Positions 1,884 through 6,582 of a DNA stretch of 64,000 bases are shown piece by piece. Within the stretch, counting starts at the first letter, position 1. Each line of letters begins with the position of its first letter. Made by a program: the position numbers and the translations under genes. The notes below the pieces were generated by a model. It saw nothing but the letters and a program-made list of their open reading frames with translations, did no database searches and was not told the origin of the DNA. Source of the DNA: Vicugna vicugna (lineage: Eukaryota); the NCBI GenBank assembly GCA_013265495.1, contig MU060042.1:6072258-6136257 (forward strand), given 5' to 3'.

Positions 1884-3457
1884 GTATGTACCTGGTTGGT
1901 GTGTTCCTTGCTGGGGCGCCCGTGCGGTCCCCGCTGACTGCACTTGGAGCGTCAGACAGCAGTTCTGCCTTGATTCTCCTGGTTCCCACTGTTGGTTTTC
2001 CGGCACTTAGCATGCCGGCTGTCTTCTCCCCAGACCCTCCCATCCCTGCGTCTCTATGGATGTCCAGGCACTGGCGGTTCTGGGGAACTTGGGGCCGGAG
2101 CCCAGGGCGACAGGGGTGGGGAGAGGCCCCGAGAGCAGTGGGGTCTTAGCAGTTGGAAGGGGGCGAGTGGAGGTGGTGGGAGAGGGGCGCCCAGGGCTCC
2201 CCGCGGGCAAGGCGGTGGCTTTGCCGGGTCAGGAGTCTCGAGGGGTTGCTGGCAGGGGTGTTGGCTTTAGACTCTCGTGTGCTGTTGTCCCTCAGGACGT
2301 GATACAGTCCTGAGTCCGACAGTGCCTGCCCCCCCCCTCCCTGTCCTGGCCTTTGCTTTCACCACAGGGATGGCCAGGCATTGACAAAGGGCTGTTTTAT
2401 ATTTTGAGAATTTTTTGCTTCCCCTGTACAAAGAATTTCCCCACTTCTACCCAGAAAAGTAGCCCGCCCCATTACACTACATCAGACACCACTTTTTGTG
2501 GGTGTTGTGGGGGGAGCGGGCTCCAGGGCCCTCGGGTGGTGCAGGTCTGGGCCGCTGGGTCTGCTCCCTGGGCTAGATTTGGTGTGGTTTTTACCTCCCG
2601 CATCTGGAGTTAACTGTGCCGGGTACTTGAGCTGCCTTTTGTGTTTCACCTGCCACGACGAAAACAGACTCAGGAAATAACATTAACTTCGGACGCATGA
2701 ACACTTTTTCTGGGCAGTCGCAGGCTTAATTGGCTGCTGGAGAACCTGAAGGGCGTCAGGCGCCCCTCCTGGGTTTGCTTTTCGACGCAGGAGGCAGGCA
2801 CAGGGCTCGCACCCTCTGAAGTTTGGCTCTCGGCACCTCCCTCCCTGGGTCTCAGTCGTGGGCAGAAATCAAGTTAAAAGCCCACAGGGAGGTCCGCTTT
2901 TGTTAAGTGGCTTTTTGGACCCTCGCTCATATTTCTGCTCACCCCGTGCACCCTGACAGCTTCGGGGAGAACAGTAATCCCTTTCTGGACTCGATGTCAG
3001 GTAGGTGCCCTGCAGGGGAACGGTTGGGTATTCCAGACAGCTGAGATTCGAGTAAGGGCTCGCCCTCCCCCTGTGACTGAGAGCTCTCCCCTGGCCGCGG
3101 GCTGGACACCTGTGTGTGTAGATGAAGTCGTGTTGGGGTGCGGCCAGCCCTACTGGTCCACACCAGCTTTCCGTGGACGAGGGCTCCCGAGGCCCCTGAA
3201 CAACCCCGTCCCTCTGGCCCTTTAGAGGAAGTGTTCTGACTCCCGCTTTGAGGGATCTCAGAAGCGAAGAAGCCTGTCTTAGTGTTGCTTTCTGCGGAAA
3301 CTTGGAGATTTTACACGCGAGCTGAATGAAGGCTCTCAGTGTATCTGTTTCTAGGGAATTTGCTTTCCGGTGGTTTCATATAAGAGACACTCTTAACTTC
3401 TGATTGAGGATTATTTTATAAACTGTGCTGGTAATTTTGATGGGTTCTTACTCCCAG

Positions 3458-3624
3458 AAATCTCTTCCCTTGTGGAGACTCAATGGTTTGCATCATTGAT
3501 GACCGAGAAGACGTCTGGAAGTTTGCCCCCAACCTGATCACTGTGAAGAAGTACGTGTACTTCCAGGGCACGGGGGACGTCAACGCCCCGTCTGGGTCCC
3601 GGGAGCCTCAGGCCAGGAAGAGAG
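3458..3624 (+). CDS. CTDP1: CTDP1 coding exon 7
   Basis: CAG acceptor and AG|GTGGGC donor. 167 nt. Encodes NLFPCGDSMVCIIDDREDVWKFAPNLITVKKYVYFQGTGDVNAPSGSREPQARKR. Confidence 0.98.
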
Positions 3625-4522
3625 GTGGGCCACTCCGCCGGGGCGTCAGAGGATGAGTGTTTGCTCCTGTTTTTCTCCTCTCATCTCTGTCACGGCCACT
3701 GTAAATTCAGAATTCAGTTTGGTTTTATTTCTTTTTATTACTTTAGTTATACAGGTTGTTGGTTTATTTATTTACGCTGAAAAGCACGATATTATTTGGC
3801 TTCAGTTATTTTTTTTCTGACAGTACTAACCTAAACGTTTTTTGAGTGAGTGAAGATTAAAGAATACAACTTAGTGCATCTGAATACTGCCTTTCATTCC
3901 CAGCTTTCCTTGAAGGACAAACGTGACTCTGGGAATCTGGCCGCTGCACTGTGTGCAGAGAGCACACTGGTGTGAGGCTCTGGCACGCGGGAGGCCGACG
4001 CCGTGCCCTGGCCCGGAGCCAGCGGGGAGGCGTGCAGCTGCGCCTGCCAGGCAAGCCTGAACCTAAAATCTGGAGAAAATTTAAAGTTTTGGTTTAAATG
4101 AAGTTTTTCTGATGATCTTTAGTTTTTAAATGAAATACTTCGAGGCATACGGTTATTGCTGCAGTCACTGAAATGACCCTGAGGTGCAGGCCAGGAGGGG
4201 TGGGACCCAAGAGCATCCCCACGGAGGATCAGGCTGGACAGCACGGCTTGTGGAGGCTGCCGTCCACAGGCCCGGCCTGACCGCGGCCTGGACACTAAGC
4301 ATGCGGCATGTTTTGTGTCGTCGTGGAAACCAAGGCAGAGTGAGCGTGTGAGGTCCCCAGACCTGAGTGTTTTCTCTCCAGCTCCTCCCAGCAGAGGTTT
4401 GCCAACCCTGGGCCAGAGTGGGGTTCAAGCCCGCAGCCGTGGGAGGCAACCAGGTCTGCTTGAGCGGGAAGTCCCTGTTAGATGCTGAGTGACACACCTT
4501 TTTCTCTCGTGCACACGTGTAG

Positions 4523-5519
4523 TAAATCCTTCTTCTAAAAGGTGCCGACATCCCGGAACAGCCTCCATCCGTCAGGGACCCCGAGGAAGGAAGGCAGGTG
4601 TCTGGGGTTGAGCAGAGCAACGGCCTCGGGAAACCAGCGAGGGAGCTAAACGGAGGTGCTGCTCCACGGGGGGGCTGGCCCTGGCCTGGGCAGGAGGAGG
4701 ACAGGGGCGCCCGGCCCGCCGCCCGCACCCCTGGGGCCGATGGCAGGGGGCCCCCATCATGTGTACAGCAGCGGGGGCGGACACAGCCCGAGAAGCGGCC
4801 CGTGTGGGGCCCCACAGGCCCCGACCTGGAGCTGGACGTCCCCAGTGACAGCGGGAGCAGCAGTGAGTCTGAAGGCCGGCCGTCCCCCGCCGCCTCTGAC
4901 TGCGAGAGCGGGGAGAAGAGGGCCCGGAAGACCAAGGCCCCCCGGGACGCCGGCAAGGGCGGCCCACCCGGCGCAGCGGCGGACAGGCCTGCGGGTGCCA
5001 ACCACTGCGGGGAGCCCACGCCCGGTGCCCACCTGGACGGCCAGGAGGAGGGCGAGCGGGACGGCCTCTGCGGGCTGGGCAGCGGCTGTGCTGACAGGAA
5101 GGAGGCTGAGACGGAGTCGCAGAACAGCGAGCAGTCAGGCATCACGGTGGGTGAGTCCCTGGACCAGAGCGTGGAGGAGGAGGAGGAGGAGGAGGAGGAC
5201 GCCGACGACGATGACCACCTGGTGCACCTGGAGGAGATCCTGGCCCGTGTGCACTCTGACTACTACGCCAAGTACGACCGCTTCCTCCGCGGGGAGGCCC
5301 AGGAGCCCCCCGACATCCGGAAGATTGTGCCCGAGCTCAGGAGCAGGGTGCTGGCTGATGTCGCCATCATCTTCAGTGGGCTGCACCCCACAGACTTCCC
5401 GGTGGAGAAGACGCGGGAGCACTACCATGCCACGGCGCTCGGTGCGCGCATCCTCACCCAGCTGGTGCTGGACCCCGACGCCCCCGACAGGGCCACCCAC
5501 CTGATCGCGGCGCGGGCCG
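4523..5519 (+). CDS. CTDP1: CTDP1 coding exon 8 (linker, acidic tract, start of BRCT). Apparent +1 frameshift near 4537-4540; an in-frame alternative start exists at 4542.
   Basis: The ORF-track frame gives ...ETESQNSEQSG...EEEEEEEEDADDDDHLVHLEEILARVHSDYYAKYDRF...VLADVAIIFSGLHPTDFPVEKTREHYHATALGA...ATHLIAARA. Donor G|GTGAGT at 5519/5520. From the orthologous TAG acceptor (4520-4522) the exon is 997 nt, not a multiple of 3; from AAG (4539-4541) it is 978 nt. Confidence 0.95.
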
Positions 5520-6582
5520 GTGAGTCGGGCCTTCCCTGTTGGGAGTGGGGTCCTGGTGCAGCCTCTCCCTGGGGACAGCCCCAACTCTGACTCGGCGGCT
5601 GTCCCCGCGTGTGGCCCCGTGCTGCGTGTGAAATGAGCAGGTTGTACCTGGGTCGGGGTGGAGCTGGGGCCCCAGCGCGTCTGCCCAGCCGCCGTGTGTG
5701 GTCACACGTGTCGAGGTTGAACAGGGGAGGCGCAGATTGGTCAGGACCCATGTGCACCCCGGTTGAATATAGGTGGTAAGTGAGGGTTACGGCGGAGCTT
5801 CCCTCAGATGCTCAGGCACTGCTGGTCTCAGCCGAGTGGATGGTTCCTCATCGAGCGGACGGCCCCTCAGTGATTGGCGCACCATGAAGGCATGCTCACG
5901 CCCTTTTCCTTTAAAGAAAGTCAGAAGAACCTCATTACTTCCTTGAAGCAGTTTGGTGTTTTCCAAACAAAGCCTGCTGCAGGCCGGCCTCTCTGGTCAT
6001 TGCCCCTCCCTCATCTGCAGCCGCTGAGTCAGGGCTTGTGAACACCTGCCCCCAACAGAGCATGATCCGCAAGGTCCTCTGTGAACTCGCGGGTGGGACA
6101 GGCCCTCCCCGATGGTGGAGGAGACCTTCCCAGGACATCAGGTGCTGTTGTGTGTCTGCCCCGCCTGCATCCAGAGTGGTCTGTTACTGTTCTGGGAGAT
6201 GGTGGGAGACGGTGGGCTCCAGGGGTGGAGAAATGAGGGGTCCCAGCAGAGGGGGACTAGGGTCGTGACCTTAAACGGCCAGCGGAGGAGCTGAGACTCC
6301 ATGTAGCAGGGAGAGGGGCTTGCAGCAGGTTCCTGATTGGGGCAGGGGAGCAGGACTTGGGGACGTGGTACTGTGTTCTCGGGAAGAGAGCGAGCTGCAG
6401 GCTCTGCAGTGGACACTGAGAGGGGTGGTACCAGCGGAGGCTTGAGACCCTTCCTGAGCCATCATGAAACAGTGTCCCTGCAAACCTGGCCTACCGCCCT
6501 GCTGTGAGGTCACCCCTCCGGGGCCCCAGCCTGCACACCTTGCCCTGACGGCAGCACTGCACTGACGGGTGTTTGCTTGCAG

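What the first reader, a model, noticed from the sequence alone, without database searches (positions are those of the whole stretch)
4520..4546. +1 frameshift at the start of CTDP1 exon 8, with a built-in rescue acceptor
Seen: exon 7 ends in phase 1. From the orthologous acceptor (TAG 4520-4522) the sequence reads (G)TA AAT CCT TCT TCT AAA AGG TGC... and stops at TGA about 30 codons in. The FCP1 frame (K-G-A-D-I-P-E-Q...) is shifted by one base, i.e. TCT-AAAA-GGT has one A too many. The AAG at 4539-4541, preceded by CCTTCTTCT, would restore the frame (978-nt exon) and drop only VNPSSK. Established: FCP1 is essential and every other exon here is intact. Inference: either a homopolymer assembly error, or a real insertion tolerated because splicing moved 19 nt downstream.
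Basis: partly seen in the sequence, partly recalled or inferred. Interest (0 to 1): 0.7.

Follow-up and report, generated by a model that had tools for sequence, protein, structure and literature searches.

The report
Camelid CTDP1 exon 8 start
The extra A is real and shared by all camelids, but it lies in an optional 18-base extension of CTDP1 exon 8 that pigs, hippos and ruminants are annotated as skipping, so the gene is intact and the finding is ordinary.

Summary
Exon 7 ends at 3624 in phase 1. An exon starting at 4523 is 997 nt, shifted by +1, and stops at TGA 4609-4611. An exon starting at 4542 is 978 nt and open.

The four-A run is not an assembly slip. Three other camelid assemblies (alpaca, dromedary, wild Bactrian camel) carry exactly the same sequence. 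Seven non-camelid mammals lack the extra A.

The downstream AG is not a new rescue site. It is an old alternative acceptor, normally 18 nt downstream of the first, and both forms are annotated in whales, primates, rodents and elephants. It is the only annotated acceptor found in pig, hippo and ruminants, and pig cDNA contigs use it.

All 15 camelid CTDP1 proteins in public databases, from four species, already read ARKR|GADIPEQ, which corresponds to an exon start at 4542. None is flagged low quality.

So camelids fixed a 1-nt insertion in a dispensable six-codon extension within FCP1's variable linker region. The other exons in the window (6, 7, 9-13) are open.

One question stays open: how often camelid cells still use the upstream AG, which would give a transcript with a premature stop.

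Interest is low.

The parts
3456..3624 (+). CTDP1 exon 7. It ends in phase 1 (last base G 3624); the donor GT is at 3625-3626.
   Evidence: Translation gives ...YVYFQGTGDVNAPSGSREPQARKR(G). tblastn with pig and dolphin FCP1 matches this stretch. The residues are identical to the exon 7 end of alpaca XP_072808495.1.
4489..4522 (+). Upstream acceptor region: GTGAC motif (a branch-point candidate, inferred), pyrimidine tract cctttttctctc, and tag at 4520-4522.
   Evidence: Conserved in 10 of 11 aligned mammals; musk deer has TGG in place of the AG. This acceptor yields the long isoform (VNxSxK) in primates, bats, carnivores, horse and whales.
4523..4541 (+). Optional 5' extension of exon 8. It is 19 nt here and 18 nt in other mammals, and contains the extra A in the run 4537-4540. 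In camelid gene models it is intronic.
   Evidence: Alignment A3 shows a single extra column in the four camelids only. Piece lengths are given.
4540..4541 (+). Downstream acceptor AG (aaag|G), the acceptor used in all camelid gene models.
   Evidence: All 15 camelid proteins read ARKR|GADIPEQ. The AAG|G is invariant in all 11 species. Pig cDNA contig L009 joins exon 7 directly to the orthologous GTGCCGATG.
4542..5519 (+). CTDP1 exon 8 as used in camelids: 978 nt, phase 1 to phase 1, with donor gtgagt at 5520.
   Evidence: The frame is open over 325 codons. It differs from alpaca X1 at 2 of 325 residues. tblastn gives a single HSP against pig FCP1.
4609..4611 (+). TGA that ends the frame if the upstream acceptor is used. 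It lies 908 nt before the exon 8 donor.
   Evidence: That such a transcript would be degraded by nonsense-mediated decay is inferred from the 50-55 nt rule (established knowledge), not shown here.

Best explanation
The window is CTDP1 (FCP1) of a llama-tribe camelid. Placental mammals have two acceptors for exon 8, normally 18 nt apart, giving FCP1 with or without a hexapeptide (VNHSSK-like) in the variable region between the catalytic and BRCT domains. In the even-toed ungulates sampled, the downstream acceptor is the main or only one annotated. The camelid ancestor fixed a 1-nt insertion (AAA to AAAA) inside the optional 18-nt piece. This destroyed only the long isoform. The short isoform, spliced 3624>4542, encodes the complete phosphatase and is the one in every camelid gene model. 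Shown here: the insertion is real and shared, the downstream acceptor is conserved and used in relatives, and the rest of the gene is open. Inferred: camelid cells splice mainly at 4542, and any use of the upstream AG gives a transcript with a premature stop that nonsense-mediated decay removes.
For: The identical 19-nt piece with AAAA occurs in four independent camelid assemblies. Over the first 19-20 kb of the window these differ from it by 1.06% (alpaca) and 4.7% (both camels) in mismatches. All seven non-camelids lack the extra A. All 15 camelid proteins from C. ferus, C. dromedarius, C. bactrianus and Vicugna pacos read ARKR|GADIPEQPPSV, and none is labelled low quality. Short-form proteins are annotated in pig, warthog, hippo (6 of 12 isoforms inspected, all short), musk deer, deer, muntjac, whales, monkeys, orang-utan, elephant, voles and pangolin. 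Long and short forms coexist in whales, primates, voles and elephant. Pig RNA-derived contigs encode the 929-aa short form (52, 54 and 167 contigs for three variants), and cDNA L009 shows the junction directly, although the pig genome keeps an in-frame VNLFSK piece. In musk deer the upstream AG is GG and the piece is 15 nt, an independent loss of the long form. Exons 6, 7 and 9-13 in the window align in open frames.
Against: There is no RNA or read evidence from camelids themselves. RefSeq models are predictions, and I could not see their RNA-seq support. The upstream acceptor is still a good-looking site in camelids (tag after a 12-nt pyrimidine tract), whereas the downstream one has an A at position -3, which is usually weak (established knowledge). 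Appreciable unproductive splicing therefore cannot be excluded.
Confidence: 0.9

Rival explanations
1. Homopolymer assembly error: the true sequence is AAA, and the long exon from 4523 is in frame.
For: Single-base errors in A runs are common in long-read assemblies (general knowledge). With AAA the piece would read VNPSSK|GADIPEQ, matching other mammals.
Against: Four independent assemblies from two camelid tribes have the identical AAAA. One of them, the wild Bactrian camel GCA_000311805.2, is a gap-rich older draft. No camelid protein model contains VNPSSK.
Confidence: 0.01
2. Compensated frameshift in the strict sense: camelid ancestors used mainly the upstream acceptor, the insertion was harmful, and splicing then shifted to the downstream AG as a lineage-specific rescue.
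For: The upstream acceptor is the main form in many other orders (bats, carnivores, horse, primates). In whales, which lie inside the even-toed ungulates, the long form is still annotated.
Against: In pig and hippo every protein inspected uses the downstream acceptor although the long frame is intact, and ruminants use it too. Heavy use of the downstream site therefore most simply predates, or arose independently of, the camelid insertion. The AAG|G and its pyrimidine tract are the same in camelids as elsewhere, with no camelid-specific strengthening visible in A3.
Confidence: 0.06
3. Unproductive-splicing switch: both acceptors are used substantially in camelids. The insertion turned a harmless isoform choice into a productive/decay choice that lowers or regulates the FCP1 dose.
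For: The upstream tag and its pyrimidine tract are intact in all four camelids. Its use gives a stop at 4609-4611, far upstream of five further junctions.
Against: There are no data on usage. In pig, where both sites are intact and in frame, none of the 15 listed members of the 38-member protein cluster has the long-form length, which suggests the upstream site is hardly used in this clade. This reading is compatible with the best explanation and is counted within it as a minor possibility.
Confidence: 0.03

Closest known systems
Annotated camelid CTDP1 (e.g. Vicugna pacos XP_072808495.1, Camelus ferus XP_032326611.1, C. dromedarius XP_031297567.2)
   Same: Same gene and same exon 7-exon 8 junction, ARKR|GADIPEQPPSV. 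The window's exon 7 end is identical to alpaca, and exon 8 differs at 2 of 325 residues.
   Different: The window comes from another llama-tribe genome, with 1.06% mismatches to the alpaca assembly over 19 kb. The annotations do not mention the decayed upstream extension.
Short-distance tandem alternative 3' splice sites (acceptor pairs a few to a few tens of nt apart, in frame), a well-known class in mammals
   Same: Two AGs 18 nt apart, each preceded by pyrimidines, both annotated as used and giving plus or minus 6 residues in whales, primates, rodents and elephant.
   Different: In camelids the spacing is 19 nt, so the pair is no longer in frame and only the downstream site is productive. 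In musk deer the upstream AG is gone.
CTDP1 deep-intronic founder variant in CCFDN syndrome (PMC12785426, title and abstract only)
   Same: Same gene; a sequence change that affects splicing outcome.
   Different: The human variant is a disease-causing deep intronic change. The camelid change is fixed, lies in an optional piece, and leaves the normal product intact.

Membership tests
CTDP1 / FCP1 orthologue | Exon-by-exon colinearity and high identity with mammalian FCP1, including the catalytic (NIF) and C-terminal (FCP1_C) domains | tested here: met
   tblastn with pig and dolphin FCP1 finds exons 6-13 in order and in open frames. The exon 8 search returns FCP1 proteins. Camelid proteins with the same residues carry PF03031 and PF09309.
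Tandem alternative 3' splice site pair | Two nearby AG acceptors, each with an upstream pyrimidine tract, conserved across species | tested here: met
   The downstream AAG|G is invariant in 11 of 11 species. The upstream YAG is present in 10 of 11.
Tandem alternative 3' splice site pair | Both acceptors are used in mRNA | tested here: inconclusive
   Both forms occur among RefSeq isoforms and RNA-assembly-derived proteins of other mammals. The short junction is seen in pig cDNA L009. For camelids only the short form is annotated, and no camelid RNA could be examined.
Tandem alternative 3' splice site pair | Spacing is a multiple of 3, so both products are in frame | tested here: not met
   The spacing is 19 nt in all four camelids and 18 nt in pig, hippo, whales, carnivore and horse.
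Assembly artefact (homopolymer miscount) | The length of the run differs between independent assemblies or reads of the same lineage | tested here: not met
   AAAA is identical in the window, L011, L012 and L001.
Pseudogene / gene loss | Disabling changes with no productive transcript possible, and decay elsewhere in the gene | tested here: not met
   An open 978-nt exon runs from the conserved acceptor. The other exons are open.
Unproductive splicing coupled to nonsense-mediated decay | A used splice variant carries a stop more than about 55 nt upstream of the last exon junction | not testable with these tools
   The stop at 4609-4611 meets the position rule. Use of the upstream AG in camelid RNA could not be measured.

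The most novel reading that the evidence does not exclude
In camelids the upstream acceptor is still used at a meaningful rate. The fixed +1 would then have turned an old, harmless isoform choice into a productive versus decayed choice that sets the dose of an essential RNA polymerase II phosphatase. Together with the musk deer's loss of the upstream AG, this would be a second independent route to discarding the same hexapeptide.
Probability: 0.15. Interest if true: 0.35.

Novelty: already known. Interest (0 to 1): 0.12.

Why it matters
It matters mainly for the scan itself. An apparent frameshift in an essential gene turns out to be a correct sequence with a normal, already annotated exon boundary. 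The practical lesson is to compare exon boundaries with the nearest relatives, not with the human isoform. There is also a small evolutionary point. The six-residue extension at the start of FCP1 exon 8 has been lost twice in even-toed ungulates, through +1 in camelids and AG to GG in musk deer. It is also absent from every pig and hippo protein inspected. This suggests the extension is dispensable in that clade.

Tried and rejected
- **Read evidence:** There are therefore no read or junction counts.
- **Metagenome scans:** two scans for the camelid cDNA junction (either form) and for the genomic site with AAA or AAAA found nothing.
- **First protein searches:** these missed the camelid RefSeq proteins. 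The length filter excluded the 994-aa representative of their cluster. A third search with hippo X1 recovered it.
- **Contig look-ups:** look-ups for pig X3 and hippo X4 failed because only the longest product of a gene is on record. Using the X1 forms solved this.
- **Old C. ferus model (P0005):** it joins exon 7 to an internal site of exon 8 and looked like a hint of trouble. It is an artefact of a 553-N gap in that assembly.
- **Internal AG at 4588:** it also gives an open frame, but it has no pyrimidine tract and lies inside coding sequence in all species. Rejected.
- **Shifted exon 7 donor:** no other GT lies next to 3625 that could compensate.
- **Literature:** a search on CTDP1 isoforms found nothing about this acceptor pair.
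- **Splice-site scores:** I did not compute them, because no trained model was available offline.

Full report
**What is in the sequence**

Exon 7 of CTDP1 ends at G 3624, with donor GT at 3625-3626, in phase 1. Downstream the sequence reads gtgtag|taaatccttcttctaaaag|GTGCCGAC.
- An exon starting at 4523 is 997 nt. It reads VNPSSKRCRHPGT... and stops at TGA 4609-4611 after 29 codons.
- An exon starting at 4542 is 978 nt and open. It reads GADIPEQPPSVRDPEEGRQVSGVEQSNGLGKPARELNG... up to the donor at 5520.

**Which genome**

The exon 8 translation finds mammalian FCP1 proteins.
- Genomic loci of wild Bactrian camel (L001) and dromedary (L012) differ from the window by about 4.7% in mismatches.
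- The alpaca assembly GCA_048564905.1 (L011) differs by 1.06% over 19 kb.
- The exon 7 end (APSGS) equals alpaca, and exon 8 differs from alpaca X1 at 2 of 325 residues.

The window is therefore from a llama-tribe camelid, but not from that alpaca assembly.

**Is the fourth A real?**

The window and three other camelid assemblies carry the identical 19-nt piece with AAAA. They cover two tribes, and one of them is an older draft assembly. In alignment A3 the four camelids have a single extra column compared with the other seven species: pig, hippo, a dolphin-like contig, a baleen-whale-like contig, a carnivore-like contig, a horse-like contig and musk deer. A repeated miscount at the same base in four assemblies is not credible. 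The insertion is real and predates the split of camels and llamas.

**What the downstream AG is**

It is not a lucky rescue site. Across placental mammals, public proteins show two forms of this junction.
- The long form has a hexapeptide: VNHSSR in monkeys, VNHSSK in rodents, VNYPPK in bats, VNQSPK in seals, VNHSPK in horse, VSPSPK in whales and VIHSSK in elephant.
- The short form goes straight to G-A/T-D/E.
- Both forms are annotated within the same species in whales, Old World monkeys, voles and elephant.
- In pig, warthog, hippo, musk deer, deer and muntjac I found only the short form. This includes all 6 hippo isoforms inspected, out of 12.
- For pig, proteins derived from RNA assemblies encode the 929-aa short form on many contigs. 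The cDNA contig L009 shows exon 7 joined directly to GTGCCGATG.
- The pig and hippo genomes nevertheless keep an intact upstream AG and an in-frame 18-nt piece (VNLFSK, VSPSPK).
- Musk deer has lost the upstream AG (TGG), and its piece is 15 nt.
- The AAG|G of the downstream acceptor is invariant in all 11 species.

**How camelid genes are annotated**

The cluster around Camelus ferus XP_032326611.1 holds 15 proteins, from C. ferus, C. dromedarius (two annotation releases and one submitter annotation), C. bactrianus and Vicugna pacos. All read ARKR|GADIPEQPPSV, which corresponds to an exon start at window 4542. None carries a 'low quality protein' label.

**Mechanism**

Shown:
- The insertion is real, fixed and camelid-specific.
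- The downstream acceptor is old and is used in relatives.
- The 978-nt exon and exons 6, 7 and 9-13 are open.

Inferred:
- Camelid pre-mRNA is spliced mainly 3624>4542.
- The insertion was close to neutral when it arose, because the piece was already mostly treated as intron in this clade.
- Any residual use of the upstream tag gives a stop 908 nt before the next junction and would be degraded by nonsense-mediated decay (50-55 nt rule, established knowledge).
- The hexapeptide lies in the poorly conserved stretch between the catalytic and BRCT domains. This fits its repeated loss.

**Rivals**
- Assembly error is effectively excluded.
- A true compensatory shift of splicing in camelids is possible. 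It is less simple than prior dominance of the downstream site, given pig, hippo and ruminants.
- A regulatory unproductive-splicing switch cannot be excluded without RNA data. The upstream acceptor still looks competent in camelids.

**Novelty and interest**

The exon structure is already annotated. Tandem acceptors and lineage-specific loss of one isoform are well known. The only new detail is that camelids lost the long FCP1 isoform by a +1 and musk deer by AG to GG. Interest is low.

**Things that led nowhere**

These are listed under Tried and rejected.

Noticed in passing
L002:12440-12482 (musk deer, GCA_022376915.1): The upstream acceptor AG of CTDP1 exon 8 is TGG and the optional piece is 15 nt instead of 18. 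The long isoform is therefore impossible in this ruminant, an independent loss from the camelid +1.
   Followed up: partly
L001:10195-10747 (Camelus ferus GCA_000311805.2): A 553-N gap sits inside exon 8 of the old wild Bactrian camel assembly. It explains the odd 555-aa GenBank model (P0005), which joins exon 7 to an internal point of exon 8 and skips about 140 residues.
   Followed up: yes
L008:17958-17975 (pig) and L010:15159-15176 (hippo): Both genomes keep an intact, in-frame 18-nt extension with a good upstream AG, yet none of the proteins inspected (pig RNA-derived ones included) uses it. It is unexplained why the weaker-looking AAG acceptor wins over a TAG or CAG 18 nt upstream.
   Followed up: no
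window 4489-4493 and the same columns of alignment A3: A conserved GTRAC motif lies about 30 nt upstream of the first AG in nearly all species. It is a plausible shared branch point for both acceptors.
   Followed up: no
window 5177-5203: The acidic run encoded by the GAG repeat has eight E in the window and seven in the old Camelus ferus model (P0005). Camel and window exon 8 also differ by a small in-frame indel near residue 129 of the exon.
   Followed up: no
   Followed up: no
P0420 versus P0452 (Camelus ferus X1, 994 aa; X2, 946 aa): The camel X1 isoform is 48 residues longer than X2, and exon 8 starts 48 residues later in it (index 390 against 342 in dromedary X1 and alpaca X1). The extra sequence therefore lies upstream of exon 8 and outside the finding.
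   Followed up: no
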